Assembly: GCA_951804945.1 (NCBI GenBank)
Contig: OX638149.1
Location: 117,242,001 to 117,306,000, forward strand
DNA length: 64,000 bases
Reading direction: 5' to 3'
Source: Podarcis cretensis
Taxonomy: Eukaryota
Positions 54,501-63,350 of the stretch are shown here, in pieces (position 1 is the stretch's first letter; each line of letters opens with the position of its first letter). A program made the translations under genes and the position numbers. The notes under the pieces were generated by a model. That model did not search any database. It had not been told where the DNA came from and saw only the letters and a list, made by a program, of their open reading frames with translations.

Positions 54501-57500
54501 TTTGCCTGCATCCCTCTGTCTCAGTTTATGACAAAGGGTTTGTTGCAAATATTAGCCACTATGCCTGAGACCTTCTGAATCAGTCTCTGTTTAAAGCAGT
54601 GTTTCGGTTTATTTTAAAGCAATAGTTTACACTCATTTTGTTTCTTCCCTTCCCTCTGTGTTTTTTGCTGCAGTTCCTGCTAAGATCCACTTGCCTAAAA
54701 ATCTTGAAGGCATGGGAGCCGTTCACGCTCTCCGTGGTGAAGTCATCAGCATCAAAATCCCATTCAGTGGCAAGCCTGATCCAGTGATCACATGGCAGAA
54801 AGGGCAAGATCTTATCGATACTAATGGACACTACCAAGTTATTGTGACACGGTCATTCACATCTCTTGTTTTCCCTAACGGTGTGGACAGGAAAGATGCA
54901 GGCTTCTACATTGTCTGTGCTAAAAACAGATTTGGCATTGATCAGAAAACAGTTGAATTAGATGTCGCTGATGTTCCTGATCCCCCAAGAGGACTGAAAG
55001 CAAGCGAGGTTTCAAGGGACTCGGTCAACCTGACATGGAATGCTCCAGCAAATGATGGCGGAAGCCGAGTCACACACTATACTGTTGAGAAACGCGCTAC
55101 CACAGCTGAGAGATGGATTCGTGTTGGCCAGGCTCGTGACACTCGATATACTGTGATAAACCTATTTGGCAAGACAAGCTATGTATTCCGCGTTATAGCA
55201 GAGAATAAATTTGGACAAAGCCAGCCTTCTGAACCTACAGATTCTGTAATAACAAAGGAAGATAAGACCAGAACAGTCAATTATGATGAAGAAGTTGATG
55301 AGGCCAGAGAAGTCACTACAGCAAAAGCAGCTCACTCTAATACAAAAGAACTCTATGACAGATATATGATTGCTGAAGAACTTGGGCGGGGACAATTTGG
55401 AATTGCCCACAGGTGTGTTGAGATAGTTTCAAAGAAGACTTACCTGGCCAAGTTTGTCAAAGTAAAAGGTGCTGATCAAGTGCTCGTAAAGAAAGAAATT
55501 TCCATCCTCAACATTGCTAGGCATAGAAATATCTTACAGCTTCATGAATCATTTGAAAGCCTAGAAGAACTTATCATGATCTCTGAGTTCATATCTGGAG
55601 TTGACATCTTTGAAAGACTTAATACTCCTGCATTTGAACTTAATGAAAGAGAAATTATAAGCTATGTACGTCAAGTATGTGAAGCACTTGAATTCCTGCA
55701 CAGTCATAGCATTGGGCACTTTGATATCAGGCCAGAGAACATCATCTATTTCACAAGAAGAAGCTCTATAGTTAAAATCATTGAATTTGGTCAGGCACGG
55801 CAGCTGAAACCTGGTGATAATTTCAGACTCCAGTTTACTTCCCCTGAATATTATGCGCCTGAAGTCCATCAGCATGATATGGTCAACACAGCCACAGATA
55901 TGTGGTCACTTGGAACCCTAGTGTATGTACTTCTAAGCGGCCTGAATCCTTTCATTGCTGAAACAAACCAACAAACAATTGAAAACATCATAAGTGCTGA
56001 ATACAATTTTGATGAAGAAGCCTTCAAAGATATCAGTATTGAGGCCTTGGACTTTGTTGACCGCCTGCTAGTAAAAGAAAGGAGAGCTCGCATGACTGCT
56101 ACTGAAGCCCTTGAACATGCTTGGCTGAAGCAAAGGACAGAGAAAACAAGCACCAAAGTTATCAAAACACTGAGACACAGACGTTATTATCAAACACTGG
56201 TGAAGAAGGAATGGAACACAGTTGTGTCAGCAGCCCGTGTTGCATGGGGTGGTGCAGTCAGATCTCAGAAGGCCGTTACAGTTGCTAAAGTTAAAGTGGC
56301 ATCAATTGACATTGGACCCATTACTGGGCAGATAATGCATGCTGTTGGAGAAGAAGGTGGGCATGCCAAGTATGTCTGCAAGATTGAAAACTATGATTCA
56401 TCCACAGAAGTAACCTGGTACTTTGGAGTCAGACAATTGGAGAACAGTGAAAAACATGAGATCAGCTACCATGAAGGAGTGGCCACAATGTATGTCAAAG
56501 ACATTGCTAAATCAGATGACGGTACCTACAGGTGCAAAGTTACAAATGACTATGGTGAAGACAGTTCCTACGCAGAACTATTTGTTAAAGGTGTGAGAGA
56601 AGTTTCTGACTTTTACAGACGCAGAACTGTCAGGAGAGTGAAGCGCCGAGTAGATACCTTGAGACTTTTGGAGAAGCCACCAGAATTTACGCTGCCTTTA
56701 TACAACCGTACTGCCTACGTTGGTGAAAATGTCAGGTTTGGAGTAACAATAACAGTTCACCCGGAACCTCGTGTAACGTGGTTCAGATCAGGCCAGAAGA
56801 TCAAGCCAGGAGATGATGACAGGAAGTATACCTTTGAAACTGATAAGGGTCTTTATCAGCTTCTCATCCATAATGTCAATGAAGATGATGATGCTGAATA
56901 TACTGTGCTGGCTCGCAACAAATACGGCGAGGACAGCTGCAAAGCTAAGTTAACCGTTGTTCAGCATGCTCCTCCAGAGGCTACCACGATGAGACCCATG
57001 TTCAAAAGACTACTGGCAAATGCAGAATGCCAAGAAGGCCAGAGTATCTGCTTTGAGATAAGAGTATCTGGAATACCAAAACCAGCACTAAAATGGGAAA
57101 AGGATGGACAGCCCTTATCAGCTAGTCCAAATATTGAAATTGTACATGAAGGGTTGGATTACTATGCTTTGCATATCAGGGATACTTTACCAGAAGACAG
57201 TGGTTATTACAGAGTTACTGCGACAAACAGTGCTGGATCAACAAGTTGCCAGGCTTACTTGAAGGTAGAGCGCTCAAAATATATCAAGCGTCAATACAAG
57301 AGTGAAGAAGAGCGGCAAAAGCATGTACAGAAGAGCATTGACAAGACAGTGAGAATGGCAGAAATCCTTTCTAGAACAGAATCTGTCCCACTGACAGATG
57401 TAGCACAGGAAGCTCTCAGACAAGCTGCTATCCTGTATAAACCAGCTGTAAGCACTAAGACTGTCAAAGGTGAATTTGAACTTAAAAAGGAAGAAATTAA

Positions 57501-60500
57501 AGAAGAAAAGAGACTTCGGATGCCTTATGAGATCCCAGAGCCTCGCAGACATGCAGCTGCTACTCTGGAAGAAGATCAGAACATCAAACTGTTTGTGCCT
57601 ATGTCAGACATGAAGTGGTACAAGAAGCTGAGAGACCAATATGAAATGCCAGGGAAACTTGATAGAATTGTTCAGAAGCGACCAAAGCGCATTCGCCTTT
57701 CCAGATGGGAACAGTTCTATGTGATGCCACTGCCACGCATTACTGATCAGTATAAACCTAAGTGGCGGATACCCAAATTGTCACAAGATGATCTCGAGAC
57801 CGTCAGGCCAGCACGCCGGCGTACACCATCTCCTGATTATGAATTTTATTACCGACCAAGAAGACGCTCACTTAGTGACCTGTCAGATGAAGAACTGCTG
57901 CTACCAGTTGATGATTATTTAGCCATGAAGAGAACTGAAGAAGAAAGACTGCGACTTGAAGAAGAACTGGAGCTGGGCTTTTCTGCATCACCTCCAAGCA
58001 GAAGCCCTCCACGCTTTGAACTGTCTTCTCTCCATTACACGGCAGCAGATGCTCATATTGCCACAGAGGAATCTAGGCAAAGAGAGCTGAGGTATGGCAC
58101 TTATCACATACCCTCTAAAGAAGATACCGCTGCATCTTATGCACAGCTCCGGCAACGCCATGACAGAGCAATTTATAGACCACCAAAACAAAAACAGAGA
58201 ATAATGTCCGAGAAAGAGGATGAAGAGCTGCTGCGACCAGTAAAAACAACCCGCCGGCTTGCTGAATACAAGAGTGAGCTTGAGTATATGTCACAAGAAG
58301 AAAAGAGCCGAATGAGAAGAAGGAGAGAGAGAGAAATAACTGAGGTCAGATCAGAAGAGGAAGAGGAAGAAATAGAAATGGTGAGGCACGTTCACCGGGA
58401 ATTTTCTCCTCCCTCAAGATTACTAGGAAGAAGGCGCTCTCTTTCTCCAACTTACATTGAATTAATGCGTCCTGTGTCTGAATTAATTCGACCCCAATCA
58501 CACCCTGTGGAAGAAACAGAGAGAAGATCTCCCACACCAGAGAGAACACGGCCACGTTCACCAAGCCCAGTGTCTAGTGAGAGATCTCTCTCACGATTTG
58601 AAAGGACAGCAAGATTTGATATATTTTCCAGGTATGAATCCATGAAAGCTGCTTTGAAAACCCAAAAAACAATGGAACGGAAATATGAAGTTCTGACTCA
58701 AGAACCTTTCACTCTGGATCATGCCCCACGCATAACTCTGAGAATGCGCTCACATCGTGTACCGTGTAACACCAACACCAGATTCATTTTGAATGTCCAG
58801 TCCAAACCAACTGCTGAAGTGAAATGGTATCACAATGGTGTTGAAATTCAGGAAAGCCATAAGATTCATTTCACTAATACTAGTGGCGTATTAACCTTGG
58901 AGATTCTTGATTGCCACATTGATGATAGTGGTACATACCGTGCTGTGTGCACAAATTATAAAGGAGAATGTTCTGACTATGCAACATTAGATGTTACAGG
59001 AGGAGACTACACTACATATACCTCCCAGCGAAGAGATGAGGAAGTACCAAGATCTATTGTACCAGACTTGACAAGGACTGCAGCATATGCAATCTCCTCA
59101 TTTAAGAAAGTCTCTGAAACAGAAGCAAGTTCTTCGATAAGAGCAAGCAAATCAGAACTGACAGAAACCAGAGAATCGCTATCATCGTACGAGCACCATG
59201 CTTCTGCTGAAATGAGAGTCAGTAGTTCAGAGGAAAAATCATTGGAAGAAAGAGCTGTTCATCGGAAGTTTAAGACCACTCTGCCTGCAACAATATTAAC
59301 AAAGCCACGGTCAATCACTGTCTCTGAAGGGGAGACTGCAAGATTTTCTTGTGACATTGATGGTGAACCAACACCAACTGTAACATGGATCCGTGCAAGT
59401 CAAGCTATTGTTTCTTCTGGACGCTTCCAAGTAACACGTACGCAGTATAAATCTACCTTTGAAATTTCATCTGTCCAGACCTCAGATGAAGGAAGTTACA
59501 CTGTTGTGGTAGAAAATTCTGAAGGAAGACAGGAAGCCCACTTTAGTTTGACTGTACAAAGGAAAAGGGTCCCAGAAAAAGCAATTACATCACCTCCAAG
59601 GGTCAAATCTCCTGAGCCTCATGTTAAGTCCCCAGACAGAGTAAAATCTCCCAAGCGAGTAAAATCCCCCGAACCATCTCCTGCCCACTCTAAAGCCAAG
59701 TCAACACCTGCAGGTAAAACAACACCATCAGAGAAAGCAGACTTGCCTCTTGCTGTTCCCCCTAAGATAAAACAACAGCTGAAAGTGGAAGCTTCTGGGG
59801 ACAAAGCAAAATTCTTCTGTTCAGTTGAAAGCAGTGTTTTGAGTGTCCGAGAAGTAGCCTGGTACAAAGATGGCAAGAAACTAAAAGAGGACGATCATTT
59901 CAAATTTCATTATGCAGCTGATGGAACATATGAACTTAAAATCCATAACCTCAAGGAATCTGATCAAGGTGAATATACATGCGAGATTGTTGGGGAAGGT
60001 GGCGCCTCCAAAACCAACTTTCAGTTTGTTGGCCAAGCTTTTAAAAGTATTCATTCTCAGGTGTCAAGCTTAAGCAAAACTCAAAAATCAGTTCAGAAAG
60101 AGTCTGAAATACATGAAGTATCTGCCCAGAAAAAATCTGCAATGACTTCTCAAGAAAAGACAGTGGTTGAAGAAGAATATGTTAAAAAGTCTCTTGTGTC
60201 TGATGAAGCTAAAACATCTTACACAGAAGTTAAATCTACTACCACTAAAATGACTGTGTCTGAAGGTCAAAAATCTACCCTTAAAGCCAGTATTGCTGGT
60301 GCTTCTAATGTAAAATGGTTACTGAATGGAATAGAGCTAACTAACTCTGAAGATTATAGATATGGTGTATCAGGAAGTGATCATACTCTAACTATCCAAA
60401 AAGTGACCCAGAAAGATGAAGGAATACTTACCTGTGAAGGAAAGACTGAACAGGGTATCATCAAATGTCACTTTGAAATGAGTCTTTCAAAAGATCAATC

Positions 60501-61414
60501 AAATGCCCCAGCCTTTATCATACAACCGAAATCTCAAAACATCAACGAAGGACAAGATGTGTTGCTTACCTGTGAAGTTTCTGGAGATCCTTCCCCTGAA
60601 ATCCACTGGTTTAAAGATAACCAGCCAGTAAGTAATTACTTATGTCAGCCTTGAAATTAAATGATCCATTCTTAACCCTGAGTATAATTTGATCTTAACA
60701 AAGTATCTCTTTCATCATCAGATTGCTCTCTCATCCAACTTCCGAGTAAATCGCTCCAAGAATGTTTATTCTCTTGCAATCCAAAATGCTTTAGTGAGTG
60801 ATAGTGGAAAATACACAGTCAAAGCGAAAAACTTCCATGGGCAGTGTTCTGCAACAGCATCTCTGACCGTCCTTCGTAAGTTTTTTAAAAGTCTTGTCTT
60901 AATATGAGTAGGGCTTCTACGATATGGCAAAAGCAGTTGATTGTTTTGATTCTTTAACGAGCTGTTAGTTTCATTACTGAACCTAAAATGCAATATACAT
61001 TATAATTACAAAATACTGAATTTAAAATATATGTACTTATATGTTTCTCACCCGCTCAGTGTTACCAGAAGGCTTTGAACATCTTGCTATTAACCCGTTG
61101 GTTCCAGTGATCACTATTTAATAAACTATCAGAATAATTAATGCCCAAGGGGTTAGTTCTCTGAATTTTCTTCTTACGTTTCATTAAACTTCTCAGATAC
61201 AAACTTGCTGCATTTTAAAATCATCTGGATACCAGGAGCCAACGGGTTTCTCTATGTTTTGCTGTTGATGTATATGTATGTGCTTGTGTTTAAGGAAAAC
61301 AGCAGTGTGTTTTTTTATGGTGGTGTAGTAGTTTTAATGGCAGAATACCTGCCGAGTTATGTAAAATAAGAAGGGGAAACAAAGCACCATCCAAAGGGGC
61401 TGTATCTTTTTTAA

Positions 61415-61458
<44 letters not shown>

Positions 61459-62334
61459 TCCATGATTAGGAACATTATTACAATGAAATTCTGTTTTCCT
61501 TAAACAGCAAGCCAGTCTCTTTCTCCATCCATAAAGTATATATATTTAAGTCACATGGCTTACCAGTCAACGTGATGTCATTGGTTTTTCCGTTCTATGT
61601 TTGCTATTGTCCACAGCTCTAATTGAAGAACCTCCAAAAGAGGTAGTGTTGAGAACAAGTGGTGATGCAAGCATGCAGGAAAGTTTCTCTTCGCAGTCAT
61701 TTCAAATGTCCGCTTCTAAACAAGAAGCTTCGTTCAGCAGTAGCAGCAGTAGCAGCATGAGTGAGATGAAATTTGCAAGCATGTCTGCCAAAAGCATGTC
61801 CTCCATGCAAGAATCCTTTGTAGAGATGAGTACCAGCAGTATAATGGGGAAATCTAGTCTGACCCAACTGGAGAGTTCTTCTAGTAGAATGATTAAATCT
61901 GGTATGAGAGGTGAGCAATACTATTATACGTAGAGTTAGAAAAACACCACAATATCCTAGATATGTAGAATTAGTCATTACAGTAGAACTTCAGTTTCCG
62001 CTAAGAACTAACTTGATTTTTTCCCCTCCCATTTTGCAAAGGAATACCACCCAAAATTGAAGCTCTTCCAAACGATATCTCCATTGAGGAAGGAAAAGTT
62101 CTCACCATATCCTGTGCCTTCACTGGTGAACCTACTCCTGACATAACATGGTCCTGCAAAGGGAAAAGCATTTCTAGTCAAGGTGGTAGATTCCACGTTG
62201 AAACCAGTGAAGACTTAACCACTCTTATCATCATGGATGTTCAAAAGGACGACGGGGGACTTTATACACTGAATTTAGGAAATGATTTTGGCACTGACTC
62301 TGCCACTGTGAATATTAACATTCGATCAATTTAA
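1..62334 (+). CDS. TTN: Titin, 3' portion (A-band D6 + C1-C11 super-repeats, P-zone, titin kinase, M-band); spliced, 5'-incomplete, 58 coding exons in window
   Basis: Ig/Fn3 super-repeat pattern, titin kinase with EFG, KSP repeats and C-terminus ...[11 protein letters not shown]; all exons bounded by AG/GT and join in frame. Confidence 0.99.
2276..2596 (+). CDS. TTN: TTN exon ~305; Fn3 A42
   Basis: tacag|AACCA ... CTTG|gtaat; [12 protein letters not shown]. Confidence 0.93.
2679..2963 (+). CDS. TTN: TTN exon ~306; Ig A43 (start of C-zone)
   Basis: ttcag|AACC ... CTTG|gtgag; [13 protein letters not shown]. Confidence 0.93.
3120..3419 (+). CDS. TTN: TTN exon ~307; Fn3 A44
   Basis: aatag|ATAC ... 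CTAA|gtaagt. Confidence 0.93.
3494..3546. repeat. (TAA)n/(TAAA)n microsatellite, tail of the adjacent L2 element
   Basis: Direct reading. Confidence 0.9.
3494..3677 (-). mobile_element. L2-clade LINE 3' end fragment
   Basis: ttatttataccctgcccatctggctgggtt...ccactctgggcagcttccaaca matches the 3' end of the longer copy at 11556-11973. Confidence 0.8.
4080..4326. mobile_element. Tc1/mariner(pogo)-type MITE
   Basis: TIRs ccatattggcctgaatataagcc / ggcttatattcaggccaatacgg (1 mismatch), TA on both flanks (4078-79, 4327-28), internal gcggctta repeats. Confidence 0.85.
4495..4797 (+). CDS. TTN: TTN exon ~308; Fn3 A45
   Basis: taag|GTGAA ... CTGA|gtaagt. Confidence 0.93.
4974..5575 (+). repeat. 186-bp direct repeat pair (4974-5159, 5390-5575) flanking a 230-bp GC-rich insert
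   Basis: Copies identical except one C/T (ggggcttat vs ggggtttat). Confidence 0.95.
5160..5389 (-). promoter_or_regulatory. CpG-rich promoter-like cassette (CCAAT box, GC box, TATA-like, kappaB-like site)
   Basis: Minus strand reads AGCCAATCGG...GGGGGCGGGGC...CATTTAAGG; 14 CpGs in 230 bp; motif-level evidence only. Confidence 0.45.
5872..6013. mobile_element. Degenerate hAT-type MITE related to 39696-39831
   Basis: ctccaga...ggactgcaactc / gaagttgcggtcc...tttggag imperfect palindrome. Confidence 0.55.
6200..6475 (+). CDS. TTN: TTN exon ~309; Ig A46
   Basis: ttcag|TGCCG ... ATGG|gtac. Confidence 0.93.
6579..6878 (+). CDS. TTN: TTN exon ~310; Fn3 A47
   Basis: gtag|ATGT ... TTTG|gtatg. Confidence 0.93.
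6970..7272 (+). CDS. TTN: TTN exon ~311; Fn3 A48
   Basis: acag|ATGT ... GTTG|gtaag. Confidence 0.93.
7596..7895 (+). CDS. TTN: TTN exon ~312; Fn3 A49
   Basis: ttag|ATCC ... AATG|gtaag. Confidence 0.93.
8016..8303 (+). CDS. TTN: TTN exon ~313; Ig A50
   Basis: gcag|TACC ... CTAG|gtagg. Confidence 0.93.
8400..8696 (+). CDS. TTN: TTN exon ~314; Fn3 A51
   Basis: ccag|ACAA ... TATG|gtaag. Confidence 0.93.
8787..9089 (+). CDS. TTN: TTN exon ~315; Fn3 A52
   Basis: atag|ATGT ... CAGT|gtaag. Confidence 0.93.
9197..9502 (+). CDS. TTN: TTN exon ~316; Fn3 A53
   Basis: tcag|ATCC ... TTAA|gtaag. Confidence 0.93.
10281..10568 (+). CDS. TTN: TTN exon ~317; Ig A54
   Basis: gcag|TTCC ... CTTG|gtaag. Confidence 0.93.
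10671..10961 (+). CDS. TTN: TTN exon ~318; Fn3 A55
   Basis: acag|ATAC ... TCTG|gtgag. Confidence 0.93.
11070..11357 (+). CDS. TTN: TTN exon ~319; Fn3 A56
   Basis: ctag|AAAC ... ATAG|gtgag. Confidence 0.93.
11556..11973 (-). mobile_element. 5'-truncated L2-clade LINE (ORF2 C-terminus, 3'UTR and (TTA)n tail)
   Basis: Minus [23 protein letters not shown]...[15 protein letters not shown] is typical of the L2 ORF2 C-terminus; 9-bp TSD acatacaat at 11547-55 and 11974-82. Confidence 0.9.
12008..12598 (+). CDS. TTN: TTN exon ~320; Ig A57 + Fn3 A58
   Basis: ccag|TGGC ... TTTG|gtaag. Confidence 0.93.
12684..12788 (+). CDS. TTN: TTN exon ~321; N-terminal part of Fn3 A59 (not in ORF track)
   Basis: ttag|ATGTT; [36 protein letters not shown]; ACAG|gtatt. 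Confidence 0.92.
13336..13533 (+). CDS. TTN: TTN exon ~322; C-terminal part of Fn3 A59
   Basis: gtag|GTTAC ([10 protein letters not shown]) ... ATTG|gtaag. Confidence 0.93.
13623..13919 (+). CDS. TTN: TTN exon ~323; Fn3 A60
   Basis: tcag|ATCC ... TATG|gtacg. Confidence 0.93.
14002..14589 (+). CDS. TTN: TTN exon ~324; Ig A61 + Fn3 A62
   Basis: acag|AGGC ... TTTG|gtaag. Confidence 0.93.
14689..14991 (+). CDS. TTN: TTN exon ~325; Fn3 A63
   Basis: ttag|GGCC ... GCAT|gttagt. Confidence 0.92.
15097..32199 (+). CDS. TTN: TTN giant A-band exon (~326), 17,103 bp; A64-A121
   Basis: atag|ATCC ... ACAG|gtttg; uninterrupted ~5,700-codon frame with 11-domain super-repeats. Confidence 0.97.
32421..32541 (+). 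mobile_element. Short L2 3'-end fragment with (TTAGTA)n tail
   Basis: ccctatttagggaagttttta...ggagctgcacagagtggctg resembles the reverse complement of 11600-11695. Confidence 0.65.
32676..32972 (+). CDS. TTN: TTN exon ~327; Fn3 A122
   Basis: tcag|AAAA ... CTAG|gtatg. Confidence 0.93.
33322..33909 (+). CDS. TTN: TTN exon ~328; Ig A123 + Fn3 A124
   Basis: tcag|AATC ... TACA|gtaag. Confidence 0.93.
33948..34147 (-). mobile_element. Retroposed 200-bp insertion (L1-type 3' end) with 13-bp TSD
   Basis: TSD ttctgagtttttc at 33935-47 and 34148-60; oligo-T at 33948-55 and TTTATT (minus-strand AATAAA) at 33965-70. Confidence 0.75.
34207..34509 (+). CDS. TTN: TTN exon ~329; Fn3 A125
   Basis: ttag|CACC ... 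TGTG|gtatg. Confidence 0.93.
34638..34934 (+). CDS. TTN: TTN exon ~330; Fn3 A126
   Basis: gcag|AGCC ... TATG|gtaag. Confidence 0.93.
35187..35474 (+). CDS. TTN: TTN exon ~331; Ig A127
   Basis: taag|GTGC ... CTTG|gtatg. Confidence 0.93.
35576..35875 (+). CDS. TTN: TTN exon ~332; Fn3 A128
   Basis: acag|ATAA ... TTTG|gtaag. Confidence 0.93.
35994..36296 (+). CDS. TTN: TTN exon ~333; Fn3 A129
   Basis: gcag|TTAC ... ATAG|gtaag. Confidence 0.93.
36444..36749 (+). CDS. TTN: TTN exon ~334; Fn3 A130
   Basis: gcag|AAAA ... CTTG|gtatg. Confidence 0.93.
36866..38632 (+). CDS. TTN: TTN exon ~335; A131-A136
   Basis: gcag|AGGA ... GTAG|gtaag; 1,767 bp. Confidence 0.94.
38723..39019 (+). CDS. TTN: TTN exon ~336; Fn3 A137
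   Basis: tcag|ATCC ... GCCG|gtaag. Confidence 0.93.
39347..39484. other. Assembly gap (N run), intronic
   Basis: 138 N; the flanking exons are consecutive domains, so no exon appears to be lost. Confidence 0.99.
39598..39624. repeat. (AATC)n microsatellite
   Basis: Direct reading. Confidence 0.9.
39696..39831. mobile_element. hAT-type MITE, 136 bp, with perfect 8-bp TSD
   Basis: TIR caggcttcctcaac / gttgaggaagcctg; TSD cacttgag at 39688-95 and 39832-39; whole element is near-palindromic. Confidence 0.92.
40164..40451 (+). CDS. TTN: TTN exon ~337; Ig A138
   Basis: ttag|TTGC ... CACG|gtaac. Confidence 0.93.
40547..40846 (+). CDS. TTN: TTN exon ~338; Fn3 A139
   Basis: acag|ATAC ... TATA|gtaag. 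Confidence 0.93.
40936..43002 (+). CDS. TTN: TTN exon ~339; A140-A146
   Basis: acag|CTGT ... TTTG|gtaag; 2,067 bp. Confidence 0.94.
43120..43422 (+). CDS. TTN: TTN exon ~340; Fn3 A147
   Basis: tcag|TCCC ... GTTG|gtaag. Confidence 0.93.
43512..43817 (+). CDS. TTN: TTN exon ~341; Fn3 A148
   Basis: acag|ATCC ... TACT|gtaag. Confidence 0.93.
43918..44208 (+). CDS. TTN: TTN exon ~342; Ig A149
   Basis: atag|CACC ... CTTG|gtgag. Confidence 0.93.
44329..44628 (+). CDS. TTN: TTN exon ~343; Fn3 A150 (orthologue of the HMERF hotspot domain)
   Basis: atag|ATTC ... TTCA|gtaag; DSPGPC...EKCTLAW.MPQEDGG...NKYGPG. Confidence 0.93.
44750..45055 (+). CDS. TTN: TTN exon ~344; Fn3 A151
   Basis: acag|CTAT ... 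TCAT|gtaag. Confidence 0.93.
45226..45599 (-). mobile_element. CR1 LINE 3' end
   Basis: (ATTCTATG)-type tail on the minus strand; decayed ORF2 C-terminus [19 protein letters not shown] resembles the CR1 LFSLEKRRLRGDLI motif. Confidence 0.85.
45688..45886 (-). mobile_element. L2 LINE 3' end with (AAT)n tail
   Basis: Matches 11570-11763 (cactctgggcggcttccaaca...tgacatctg.tgggagggc.ttccac). Confidence 0.85.
46177..46482 (+). CDS. TTN: TTN exon ~345; Fn3 A152
   Basis: aaag|ATAC ... CTAG|gtaat. Confidence 0.93.
46592..46873 (+). CDS. TTN: TTN exon ~346; Ig A153
   Basis: atag|AAAT ... TATG|gtaag. Confidence 0.93.
47095..47688 (+). CDS. TTN: TTN exon ~347; Fn3 A154-A155
   Basis: acag|ATAC ... 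AAAG|gtaag. Confidence 0.93.
47793..48080 (+). CDS. TTN: TTN exon ~348; Ig A156
   Basis: ttag|TTCT ... CTGG|gtaag. Confidence 0.93.
48202..48501 (+). CDS. TTN: TTN exon ~349; Fn3 A157
   Basis: acag|ACAA ... ATCA|gtaag. Confidence 0.93.
48721..49023 (+). CDS. TTN: TTN exon ~350; Fn3 A158
   Basis: gtag|GTGT ... ATTG|gtaaa. Confidence 0.93.
49175..49477 (+). CDS. TTN: TTN exon ~351; Fn3 A159
   Basis: tcag|CTCC ... CTTG|gtaag. Confidence 0.93.
49569..50153 (+). CDS. TTN: TTN exon ~352; Ig A160 + Fn3 A161
   Basis: ccag|AACT ... TTGA|gtaag. Confidence 0.93.
50215..50487 (-). mobile_element. Old tRNA-derived CORE/MIR-like SINE interrupted by a ~90-bp palindromic element (~50322-50410)
   Basis: atcct.ataataaacctgtgaggtagg...actgcccaa...agtgagttcatg.ctga...ctcttaac is the MIR-like pattern; A-box-like tggcataggagttaagag on the minus strand. 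Confidence 0.6.
50525..50830 (+). CDS. TTN: TTN exon ~353; Fn3 A162
   Basis: acag|ATCC ... TTTG|gtacg. Confidence 0.93.
50931..51230 (+). CDS. TTN: TTN exon ~354; Fn3 A163 (not in ORF track)
   Basis: acag|ACAAACC; [41 protein letters not shown]...; ACAT|gtacg. Confidence 0.93.
51574..52149 (+). CDS. TTN: TTN exon ~355; Ig A164-A165
   Basis: atag|CTGG ... CAAG|gtatg. Confidence 0.93.
52233..52538 (+). CDS. TTN: TTN exon ~356; Fn3 A166
   Basis: gtag|ATAA ... TTTG|gtaag. Confidence 0.93.
52633..53226 (+). CDS. TTN: TTN exon ~357; Fn3 A167 + Ig A168
   Basis: acag|AAAA ... GAAG|gtaag. Confidence 0.93.
54674..60627 (+). CDS. TTN: TTN fused M-band exon (Mex1+Mex3 equivalent): A169, A170, kinase, M1-M6, M8, N-terminal half of M9
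   Basis: gcag|TTCC ... CAGCCA|gtaagt; single open frame of 5,954 bp. Confidence 0.93.
55363..56127 (+). other. TTN: Titin kinase domain (CAMK/MLCK-like, pseudokinase-type)
   Basis: GRGQFG loop, [14 protein letters not shown] instead of DFG, EYYAPE; preceded by the NYD linker motif. Confidence 0.95.
59602..59670 (+). repeat. TTN: Four VKSP phosphorylation repeats (is4)
   Basis: [23 protein letters not shown]. Confidence 0.92.
60722..60875 (+). CDS. TTN: TTN Mex4; C-terminal half of M9
   Basis: atcag|ATTGCT ... CTTC|gtaag; 154 bp, phase-0 acceptor. Confidence 0.93.
61415..61457. repeat. (ATT)n microsatellite
   Basis: Direct reading. Confidence 0.9.
61617..61910 (+). CDS. TTN: TTN Mex5; Ser-rich is7 (alternatively spliced in mammals)
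   Basis: acag|CTCT ... AGAG|gtgag; 294 bp, frame-preserving. Confidence 0.93.
62042..62334 (+). CDS. TTN: TTN Mex6 coding part; Ig M10 and stop (not in ORF track)
   Basis: caaag|GAATA; [19 protein letters not shown]...[14 protein letters not shown]. Confidence 0.95.
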
Positions 62335-63350
62335 AAGCTTGATCTTTTTTTATTTTTTGGCACTTGACTTTTGGCAAGTGATTCATATGGACTGAAATAA
62401 TTGATTTGTAAATATATATAAAAAAATATTTTTGTACCTACCTGAACCAGACAAAGTCCAAGGATAGACGCTATGACTTATAGTCATTATTATTTGACTT
62501 TAAAACAATTTTTCATTTGACATGTACATACTGTATATAGCCGCAGATAACGGTTATGGAGCTTTGTACCATTTATTTTATGACATTTTAAAATGTAACT
62601 TTTGGAACAAACCGTTGGTAGGAGAAAGTTTCTTAGGGAACGAATACCCTGCTCAACATTTAACTAATTTTTGTGCCTCAACAAAATGTTGATGTCTAAG
62701 AATGCCTCAACAGGTAGAGAGGCTCCCTGTTGATGACTTATTTTACCGACACCTAAGAGATGATGCTGTGCACGGTTTCATTATACGTGCACGAATTTAT
62801 TTTGAATCAGAGACATAAGGCATTGGTGAGGTTTGCAAATACCCTCCTGTAAGCCACACTTTAATATCTTATGTTACATCTGATCAACGTCAAAACTATA
62901 TTTTGTTCATGACTGACTCGCAATACCTTGAACAAAGTGCAAGCGGCCAGCATTTTGTTCAGCACCTATCGTATTGTTTCTGACACGCCGACTACCCAAA
63001 TAGCTTTCCAGTAAAGTAACATCACCTGGCCATCCCGTTAAAAAAAAAGCCATTTGGGTACTCGAGTGCAGAAACAGTACCAACTCTTGGAGGTTCCTAG
63101 GATGCAGTGATTGTGTGGTAGCAATTAGGATTTTGGCTAGATACTGTCAACTGTAGGCAACTAAGATTTGAACCACAGTTTAAGAAAAGCTAAAACTGTT
63201 GTTATAACATCACATCTTGCCCTGAACTTAGAAAAAAAATGAATTAGTTTTATTTTATGTAGTAGTAAGTTGTTCGGTTAGCTGTTTTGTTGAACCTCCT
63301 CGAGATAGTATTGTTCATTTGAAATAAAGCATGCTACCTGCACCTCATCA
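62335..63350 (+). other. TTN: TTN 3'UTR (~1 kb)
   Basis: From stop codon to ~20 nt past AATAAA; resembles the mammalian TTN 3'UTR as recalled. Confidence 0.75.
63323..63328 (+). terminator. Polyadenylation signal AATAAA
   Basis: Followed by GU/U-rich downstream sequence (gtgtatgtttctggtccttgt...tttctttattttt). Confidence 0.8.

What the first reader, a model, noticed from the sequence alone, without database searches (positions are those of the whole stretch)
60030..60240. M-band titin lacks Ig domain M7; Mex1-Mex3 are fused into one exon
Seen: one uninterrupted frame runs from A169 to mid-M9 (54674-60627). After M6 (...[23 protein letters not shown]) it passes through a short linker ([20 protein letters not shown]...) straight into M8 ([18 protein letters not shown]), with no Ig domain and no intron between. 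The next intron is only 94 bp, so M7 is not hidden there. Known, from recall: mammalian TTN has is5-M7-is6 here, with M7 split over Mex1/Mex2 and two introns; about 168 residues are absent here. Inference: a genomic deletion removed M7, Mex2, both introns and part of is6 while keeping the frame, giving a nine-Ig M-band titin. This could alter M-band spacing and the distance between the kinase/is2 region and the M10 obscurin site.
Basis: partly seen in the sequence, partly recalled or inferred. Interest (0 to 1): 0.8.

Follow-up and report, generated by a model that had tools for sequence, protein, structure and literature searches.

The report
Titin M-band without domain M7
This lizard's titin gene really does lack the M7 immunoglobulin domain, but so do snakes, geckos, turtles, birds and frogs, so this is the old, normal state of non-mammalian land vertebrates and not a deletion special to this genome.

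Summary
One exon (54674-60627) encodes A169, A170, the kinase, M1-M6, a 71-residue linker, M8 and the first half of M9. A 94-bp intron, M9b, is7 and M10 follow. Nothing resembling M7 occurs anywhere in the 64 kb.

The window comes from a lacertid lizard (99% identical to a Podarcis muralis fragment). The same M6-linker-M8 fused exon is found in other squamates (Naja, Sphaerodactylus, three unnamed), turtles, many birds, ranid-type frogs and one unidentified deep-branching lineage. Only mammals among the tetrapod sequences retrieved carry M7.

M7 is ancestral. A teleost paralogue has it in the same place, with the same phase-0 intron after W-x-K-D-G-K. So this is an ancient loss, at or before the base of Sauropsida. 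Amphibians lost it in parallel.

The linker is the first 20-24 residues of is5 joined to a complete Mex3-type is6. Is6 is not truncated here; the mammalian is6 is expanded by repeats. Linker length (70-71 residues) is invariant across squamates, turtles and birds.

No paper in the searchable library describes this. The chicken titin gene paper (Granzier 2007) could not be read. Modest interest.

The parts
54674..60627 (+). Giant terminal-region TTN exon, equivalent to mammalian Mex1 (up to is5) fused to Mex3: A169 Ig, A170 Fn3, kinase, M1-M6, linker, M8, first half of M9
   Evidence: ORF; translation; Pfam; splice sites
55363..56130 (+). Titin kinase domain
   Evidence: Pfam Pkinase E 1.2e-55; coordinates
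59284..59559 (+). Ig domain M5
   Evidence: Matches PDB M5 chains 1nct/1tnm; coordinates
59560..59757 (+). is4 with four (V)KSP repeats
   Evidence: Translation; coordinates
59758..60036 (+). Ig domain M6
   Evidence: 72-74% identical to mammalian M6; confident Ig fold
60037..60249 (+). 71-residue linker, made of the first 20-24 residues of is5 (a helix leaving M6) joined to a complete Mex3-type is6. This is the place where M7 would lie.
   Evidence: Residues 1-24 are 67% identical to the start of mammalian is5, and residues 21-67 are 55% identical to the start of the mammalian Mex3-encoded is6. Alignment. AF2 gives helix 92-121 and pLDDT below 50 for 108-156. Length is 70-71 aa in all sauropsids.
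60097..60108 (+). Inferred is5|is6 junction zone (linker codons 21-24, K-E-S-E). It cannot be placed more exactly because is5 and the start of is6 share a QK-x-x-E motif.
   Evidence: Overlap of the two BLAST matches; alignment
60250..60489 (+). Ig domain M8
   Evidence: 68-76% identical to mammalian M8 and 59% to Dallia M8; Ig fold
60505..60627 (+). First half of Ig domain M9
   Evidence: 75-79% identical to mammalian M9 once joined with M9b
60628..60721 (+). 94-bp intron inside M9 (GTAAGT...CAG)
60722..60875 (+). Second half of M9 (Mex4 equivalent)
61617..61910 (+). is7, serine-rich (Mex5 equivalent).
62042..62334 (+). Ig domain M10 and the stop codon (Mex6 equivalent)

Best explanation
This is the ordinary 3' end of the titin gene of a lacertid lizard (Podarcis or a close relative). 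Its M-band has nine Ig domains because M7 was excised from the gene long ago, at or before the origin of Sauropsida. The excised piece was the distal part of is5, the first half of M7, the intron inside M7, the Mex2 exon (second half of M7) and the next intron. Its right-hand edge lies at, or within a few codons of, the acceptor of Mex3. That left about 20 residues of is5, a helix continuing from M6, joined in frame to a whole is6-M8-M9a exon. The product has been kept under constraint ever since, with a 70-71-residue linker in squamates, turtles and birds. M7 itself is ancestral to bony vertebrates. Mammals kept it, frogs lost it separately, and so did an unidentified deep-branching lineage. 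Shown here: the anatomy, the taxonomic spread and the homology of the two halves of the linker. Inferred: the polarity (loss), the number of independent losses and the mutational mechanism. Functional inference: M7 is dispensable for M-band assembly, since animals with well-studied normal M-bands (birds, frogs) lack it.
For: Anatomy. Species: a Podarcis muralis UniRef fragment is 99% identical. Same M6-linker-M8 continuity: Naja, Sphaerodactylus, Pelusios, Chrysemys, Gopherus, Mesitornis, Cuculus and others. The bird cluster has 131 members, with 12 or more named species. The frog cluster holds Staurois parvus. In all, 34 proteins read M5-M6-M8(-M9), against 17 mammalian proteins that read M5-M6-M7a. 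The tree of 1536-1696 shared columns recovers (P0007,(frogs,(mammals,(bird,squamates)))) with starred support. M7 is ancestral: Dallia pectoralis has M5-KSP-M7-is6-M8-M9-is7-M10. The best non-mammalian hits of the mammalian M7 N-half are the fish domains at that position, at 46-51% identity and 43-51 bits; other Ig domains reach at most 39 bits. In both fish and mammals the ORFs end right after W-x-K-D-G-K, so they share the intron. Right edge at the Mex3 acceptor: mammalian Mex3 ORF read-throughs all switch from intron-like sequence to KD(T/S)E.QK, and linker residues 21-67 align to exactly that start. Constraint: linker length is 70-71 aa and identity 51-79% across sauropsids. The first roughly 15 linker residues are a confident helix packed after M6. 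[quoted passage not shown]
Against: Unweighted parsimony on my tree needs fewer steps for two gains of M7 (t.changes = 2) than for three or four losses. The case for loss therefore rests on homology and intron position. The mammalian side of that homology is only 41 residues, because no mammalian Mex2 sequence was available. Crocodilians, salamanders, caecilians, lungfish, coelacanth and sharks were not seen directly. The tuatara and Varanus models start at is6 and are uninformative about M7.
Confidence: 0.8

Rival explanations
1. A deletion private to this species or to lizards.
For: Relative to mammals the gap is real.
Against: The architecture and linker length are identical in snake, gecko, turtles and many birds, and the architecture is the same in frogs.
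Confidence: 0.02
2. An assembly collapse or mis-join at about 60100 hides M7.
Against: The frame is uninterrupted and there are no Ns. All sampled 31-mers of 59700-60900 occur in run X1, and 56-97% occur in 19 further runs from 8 studies. Independent assemblies of many species agree.
Confidence: 0.01
3. The M7-less form is ancestral for tetrapods or sarcopterygians, and mammals gained M7 (with a separate gain in a teleost paralogue).
For: This needs the fewest steps on the tree (2 changes). The M7-less form occurs in three successive branches around mammals.
Against: It would require two insertions of an Ig at the same site, 46-58% identical to each other, each split by a phase-0 intron at the same residue. 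[quoted passage not shown] No donor domain is evident.
Confidence: 0.07
4. Mechanism variant. The loss was not a plain genomic deletion. An alternative splice, from a donor about 20 codons after M6 to the Mex3 acceptor, was hard-wired by recombination with a spliced cDNA. This would explain the exon-exact right edge, the loss of two introns at once and the recurrence in several lineages.
For: The right edge coincides with the Mex3 acceptor. The teleost paralogue that keeps M6 ends its exon at codon 20/21 after M6 and, in Eleginops, joins it to is7. The left edge falls in the same place in sauropsids, frogs and P0007.
Against: The left edge may be shared only because the helix after M6 must be kept. 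Is5 and the start of is6 share a QK-x-x-E motif that could drive an ordinary homology-mediated deletion. The frog and P0007 linkers are about 15 residues shorter, and the fish M7 deletions have other junctions. The 3' introns were not lost. I know of no M7-skipping isoform.
Confidence: 0.2

Closest known systems
Mammalian titin M-band (Mex1-Mex6; kinase, M1-M10, is1-is7)
   Same: Same gene and same order of kinase, M1-M6, M8, M9, is7 and M10. Identity is 68-79% in M6, M8 and M9. KSP repeats lie in is4. The intron is in the same place inside M9.
   Different: There is no M7 and no Mex2. The Mex1 and Mex3 equivalents are fused. The linker is 71 aa, where mammals have about 230-290 aa. Is6 is a single unit, whereas mammals have it expanded by repeats.
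Titin of birds, turtles and other squamates (public gene models and Logan ORFs)
   Same: Identical architecture and linker length. This window is one more member of that state.
   Different: Only ordinary sequence divergence: the linker is 51-79% identical to the window's.
Teleost titin paralogues with reduced M-bands
   Same: Lineage-specific in-frame loss of M-band Ig domains. PMC6922384 notes that M7-M9 are missing in its salmon and zebrafish sequences. I also saw a paralogue without M6, and forms reading M5-M8-M9 or M5-M9 in a single exon.
   Different: Different domains are lost and the junctions differ. Some keep a remnant of the M7 A strand (KPSFSIGLND), whereas the tetrapod form keeps none.
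Reverse-transcriptase-mediated intron loss
   Same: Adjacent introns are removed cleanly, with one edge at an exon boundary.
   Different: An exon and part of another were removed as well, the 3'-most introns remain, and no direct evidence was obtainable here.

Membership tests
Vertebrate titin (TTN), kinase and M-band region | Ig-Fn3 (A169-A170) followed by a titin-type protein kinase domain | tested here: met
   Pfam I-set, fn3 and Pkinase in that order. The closest homologues are titin Mex1 ORFs and named titins.
Vertebrate titin (TTN), kinase and M-band region | Ig domains M1-M6 with long is2 and KSP repeats in is4 | tested here: met
   Translation and coordinates. M5 matches PDB 1nct/1tnm.
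Vertebrate titin (TTN), kinase and M-band region | Ten M-band Ig domains including M7 (the mammalian definition) | tested here: not met
   There are nine Ig domains. No M7-like sequence exists in 64 kb. The linker is too short and is not folded as an Ig.
Vertebrate titin (TTN), kinase and M-band region | Serine-rich is7 and C-terminal M10 | tested here: met
   Exons 61617-61910 and 62042-62334, ending ...NINIRSI*.
Sauropsid-type nine-Ig M-band titin (state defined here) | M6, a 70-71-aa linker, M8 and M9a in a single exon | tested here: met
   The state is shared with Naja, Sphaerodactylus, turtles and birds.
Intron loss through a spliced cDNA | Deletion edges coincide exactly with splice sites used in an existing transcript | tested here: inconclusive
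   The right edge matches the Mex3 acceptor to within a few codons. The left edge matches a donor seen only in a teleost paralogue. No RNA evidence.

The most novel reading that the evidence does not exclude
M7 was lost independently at least three times within sarcopterygians (sauropsids, anurans and the P0007 lineage), each time between about codon 20 of is5 and the start of Mex3, and each time with exon fusion. The cause would be an ancient alternative splice that skipped M7 and was repeatedly hard-wired into the genome. Mammals would then be the only tetrapods to keep the M7-containing form. On this reading the Ig count of the titin M-band (7 to 10) is an evolving trait rather than a fixed ruler.
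Probability: 0.2. Interest if true: 0.55.

Novelty: new variant of a known kind. Interest (0 to 1): 0.33.

Why it matters
It corrects a likely misreading. A nine-Ig M-band in a reptile, bird or frog titin is normal, not a deletion or an assembly fault, and mammalian domain numbering should not be carried over to these species unchanged.

It is also a natural experiment. Animals whose M-bands are classical objects of muscle ultrastructure (chicken, frog) have no M7, so M7 and the long mammalian is5/is6 are not needed to build an M-band.

That bears on how variants or engineered in-frame changes in the human M7 region might be judged, and on models that treat M-band titin as a fixed ruler. Recent papers still describe the ten-Ig M-band as the general vertebrate layout (PMC12241362).

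Tried and rejected
1. PDB search with the window's M5-M9a region. No M7 chain appeared among the best 60 hits.

2. PDB search with a whole fish titin fragment, meant to show fish M7 against human M7. The list was swamped by kinases and was useless.

3. The look-up of encoding contigs, to get genomic loci of P0007, fish and mammals.

4. Read laying on 59000-62400.

5. Identifying P0007. It has no named cluster members. A third homologue search found it 67-69% identical to birds, squamates, frogs and mammals alike. Grouping it with frogs was rejected (p-AU 0.0096), but that group was named after the tree had been seen.

6. The idea that the left junction equals an ancestral Mex1 donor. I weakened it after finding that mammals and the M7-bearing teleost paralogue both run Mex1 into mid-M7, and that the retained 15-20 residues form a helix on M6.

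7. Literature. Six searches found no paper on M7 absence in sauropsids or amphibians. Granzier 2007 (chicken titin gene) is not held.

8. Not run.

Disclosures. The P0015 cluster contains human PDB chains. P0015 was left out of the trees, and no contigs were fetched for it.

Full report
**What is in the window**

An open frame of 1998 codons runs from 54658 to 60654 on the + strand. The splice sites can be read directly:
- The acceptor AG lies at 54672-54673.
- The donor is A|GTAAGT after 60627.
- The exon is therefore 54674-60627.

Pfam finds nine I-set stretches (E 2.3e-155), one fn3 and one protein kinase (E 1.2e-55) in it.

By sequence the order is A169, A170, kinase, M1, M2, M3, is2, M4, M5 (59284-59559), a short KSP region (59560-59757), M6 (59758-60036), a 71-residue linker (60037-60249), M8 (60250-60489) and the first 41 residues of M9 (60505-60627).

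Downstream come:
- a 94-bp intron (60628-60721);
- the rest of M9 (60722-60875);
- the serine-rich is7 exon (61617-61910);
- M10 with the stop codon (62042-62334).

**Which domain is missing**

- The Ig after the linker is 68-76% identical to mammalian M8.
- The next Ig is 75-79% identical to M9.
- The one before the linker is 72-74% identical to M6.

So the missing domain is M7.

I searched all 64 kb by tblastn with a complete M7 from the fish Dallia pectoralis and with two mammalian M7 N-halves. Only generic Ig-level matches came back. Those spanning most of the domain are 20-33% identical. Every one lies on an already named Ig domain, and none lies in an intron or after the stop.

AlphaFold2 on an alignment of nine sauropsid sequences gives two Ig folds. 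A helix continues from M6 and is confident for about the first 15 linker residues. Roughly 45 residues follow with pLDDT below 50. There is no hidden fold.

**Not an artefact**

The stretch contains no Ns.
- Run X1 holds all of the sampled 31-mers of 59700-60900.
- Nineteen further runs hold 56-97% of them.
- Together these 20 runs come from 8 studies and at least six coded organisms.

I could not lay reads. 

The stronger argument is that independent assemblies of many species show the same arrangement.

**Who else has this architecture**

A word search with residues 1540-1985 of the exon returned many Logan ORF-type proteins of about 1900-2000 residues. These are the Mex1-type exon of various vertebrates, read as a plain ORF.

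They fall into classes:
- 34 proteins read M5-M6-M8(-M9a) in one frame, like the window.
- 17 read M5-M6-is5 and the first half of M7, and then stop.
- The fish proteins form several further classes.

Cluster look-up and a second search put names on these classes.

The window-like class holds:
- Sphaerodactylus townsendi and Naja naja;
- three unnamed squamate ORFs, 81-86% identical over the searched M5-M9a region;
- the turtles Pelusios, Chrysemys and Gopherus;
- a 131-member bird cluster, with Cuculus, Merops, Corvus, Aptenodytes, Tyto, Phaethon and others, plus Mesitornis, Calypte, Buceros and Pomatostomus;
- a frog cluster that contains Staurois parvus;
- a second frog-clade ORF (P0006);
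- an unidentified ORF (P0007).

A Podarcis muralis fragment is 99% identical to the window, so the window is from Podarcis or a close lacertid relative.

The tuatara and Varanus gene models begin at is6. They therefore say nothing about M7. No crocodilian model covered the region.

The M7-bearing class is mammalian (Lemmus, Bos and others). Its largest cluster also holds human PDB chains, so I left it out of the trees and fetched nothing for it.

**Phylogeny**

A maximum-likelihood tree of 1536-1696 shared columns, essentially A169 to M5, recovers (P0007,(frogs,(mammals,(bird,squamates)))) with starred support.

Holding P0007 together with the frogs is rejected (p-AU 0.0096). The caveat is that I named this group after seeing the tree.

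A third search showed P0007 to be 67-69% identical to birds, squamates, frogs and mammals alike, with no named relative.

**Loss or gain**

The named Dallia pectoralis protein reads M5-KSP-M7-is6-M8-M9-is7-M10.

The best non-mammalian matches of the mammalian M7 N-half are the fish domains at exactly this position:
- They are 46-51% identical and score 43-51 bits.
- The best other Ig domains reach at most 39 bits.

In the reverse direction, Dallia M7 is 56-67% identical to the N-halves in other fish and in mammals.

The ORFs of both mammals and this teleost paralogue end right after W-x-K-D-G-K. So they share a phase-0 intron in the middle of the domain. Same position, mutual best similarity and a shared intron make a single origin far more likely than two gains.

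A paper on elephant-shark connectin also reports an A-band and M-band domain structure almost identical to human (PMC12241362). It does not mention M7 explicitly.

Against this, unweighted parsimony on my tree prefers two gains (2 changes) over three or four losses. The mammalian side of the comparison is only 41 residues, because I had no Mex2 sequence.

I put the gain scenario at about 7%.

**Anatomy of the junction**

Linker residues 1-24 are 67% identical to the start of mammalian is5, directly after M6. Residues 21-67 are 55% identical to the start of mammalian is6.

Several mammalian Mex3 ORF read-throughs change from intron-like sequence (…FFLAV) to KD(T/S)E.QKVSTQK. So Mex3 begins at the first residue of is6, and Mex2 holds only the second half of M7.

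The 51 residues of the window's linker after Q20 correspond to a whole is6:
- 47 residues in an unidentified non-fused Mex3 ORF (P0206);
- 40 residues in Dallia.

The mammalian is6 (94-130 residues) contains two or more extra copies of a unit of about 23 residues.

The excised piece was therefore distal is5, M7a, an intron, Mex2 and an intron, with its right edge at or within a few codons of the Mex3 acceptor.

The junction cannot be placed more exactly than codons 21-24 of the linker (60097-60108). Is5 and the start of is6 share a QK-x-x-E motif.

**Constraint and parallel losses**

The linker is 70-71 residues in every squamate, turtle and bird examined, and 51-79% identical to the window's. 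That fits one event at or before the base of Sauropsida, followed by constraint.

The frog and P0007 linkers are 53-56 residues. They lack about 15 residues that sauropsids share with the start of mammalian Mex3. Mammals sit between these lineages on the tree. The frog loss must therefore be independent of the sauropsid one, and the P0007 loss probably is too.

**Mechanism**

Two explanations fit the shared edges.
- An ordinary deletion between the similar QK-x-x-E motifs. Selection would keep the helix that follows M6, which would explain why the retained piece of is5 is always about 20 residues.
- A splice that skipped M7 was hard-wired through a cDNA. The exon-exact right edge favours this. 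So does the teleost paralogue that keeps M6: it ends its exon at codon 20/21 after M6 and, in Eleginops, joins it to is7.

I could not test the second idea and give it about 20%.

**Function**

I found no ligand of M7. [quoted passage not shown]

Birds and frogs, which have well-studied normal M-bands, lack M7. The most likely reading is that M7 is a dispensable spacer. The nine-Ig titin would then work as in chicken, with M4-myomesin and M10-obscurin contacts unaffected. This is inference, not a test.

**Comparison with the literature**

The same structural paper notes that M7-M9 are missing in its salmon and zebrafish sequences (PMC6922384).

Six searches found nothing on sauropsids or amphibians. 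A 2025 paper still gives ten M-band Ig domains as the layout reported for chicken (PMC12241362).

The chicken titin gene paper (Granzier 2007) is not held and may already describe the exon structure.

**Verdict**

The feature is real, but it is the normal state of a very large clade and not a peculiarity of this genome. I rate it as a new variant of a known kind, interest about 0.33. The value lies in the comparative pattern: mammals are the odd tetrapods, and the M-band Ig number is labile.

**Limits**

- A joined M9a+M9b string was used only inside sandbox scripts.

Noticed in passing
Proteins P0210-P0212, P0216, P0229-P0245 versus P0040, P0042, P0087, P0089: The two teleost titin paralogues have complementary M-band losses. 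One reads M5-KSP-M7a with no M6 (31 ORFs). The other reads M5-long KSP-M6 and then ends its exon (44 ORFs); in the Eleginops model it joins straight to is7-M10, without M7-M9.
   Followed up: partly
Proteins P0026, P0036, P0038, P0041, P0043, P0044 and P0084, P0111, P0112, P0252 and others: Within the M6-less teleost paralogue, some lineages have further fused exons reading M5-M8-M9a (10 proteins, some keeping the M7 A-strand remnant KPSFSIGLND) or M5-M9a (15 proteins). The M-band Ig number therefore ranges from about 7 to 10 across vertebrates.
   Followed up: partly
Proteins P0166 (Scleropages) and P0189 (Arapaima): Osteoglossomorph gene models go from M6 through an 89-residue linker to M8. 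The linker carries what looks like the M7 A strand (STISGLKDV). This may be another independent M7 loss with a different junction, or it may be a gene-model artefact.
   Followed up: no
Protein P0216: A 268-residue 'hypothetical protein' filed under Pantoea vagans is a fish titin fragment (M5-KSP-M7a). It is evidently contamination in a bacterial assembly.
   Followed up: no
Protein P0031: A Mastacembelus armatus UniRef entry named 'Myosin light chain kinase, smooth muscle' contains titin M5-KSP-M7a-is6-M8-M9a followed by unrelated sequence. It is a chimeric gene model that also skips the second half of M7.
   Followed up: no
Protein P0004; compare window 60628-60721: In the bird representative the short intron inside M9 is open in frame, so the plain ORF reads through it into M9b (2090 aa). 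In the window the 94-bp intron has a stop.
   Followed up: no
window 59560-59757: The KSP phosphorylation-repeat region (is4) has only four (V)KSP units here. Teleost paralogues carry dozens.
   Followed up: no
I worked beside it and sent it to no search tool afterwards.
   Followed up: no
window 62520-62965: Another first-stage note (s1-839597) flags hairpins in the TTN 3'UTR. I did not examine them.
   Followed up: no
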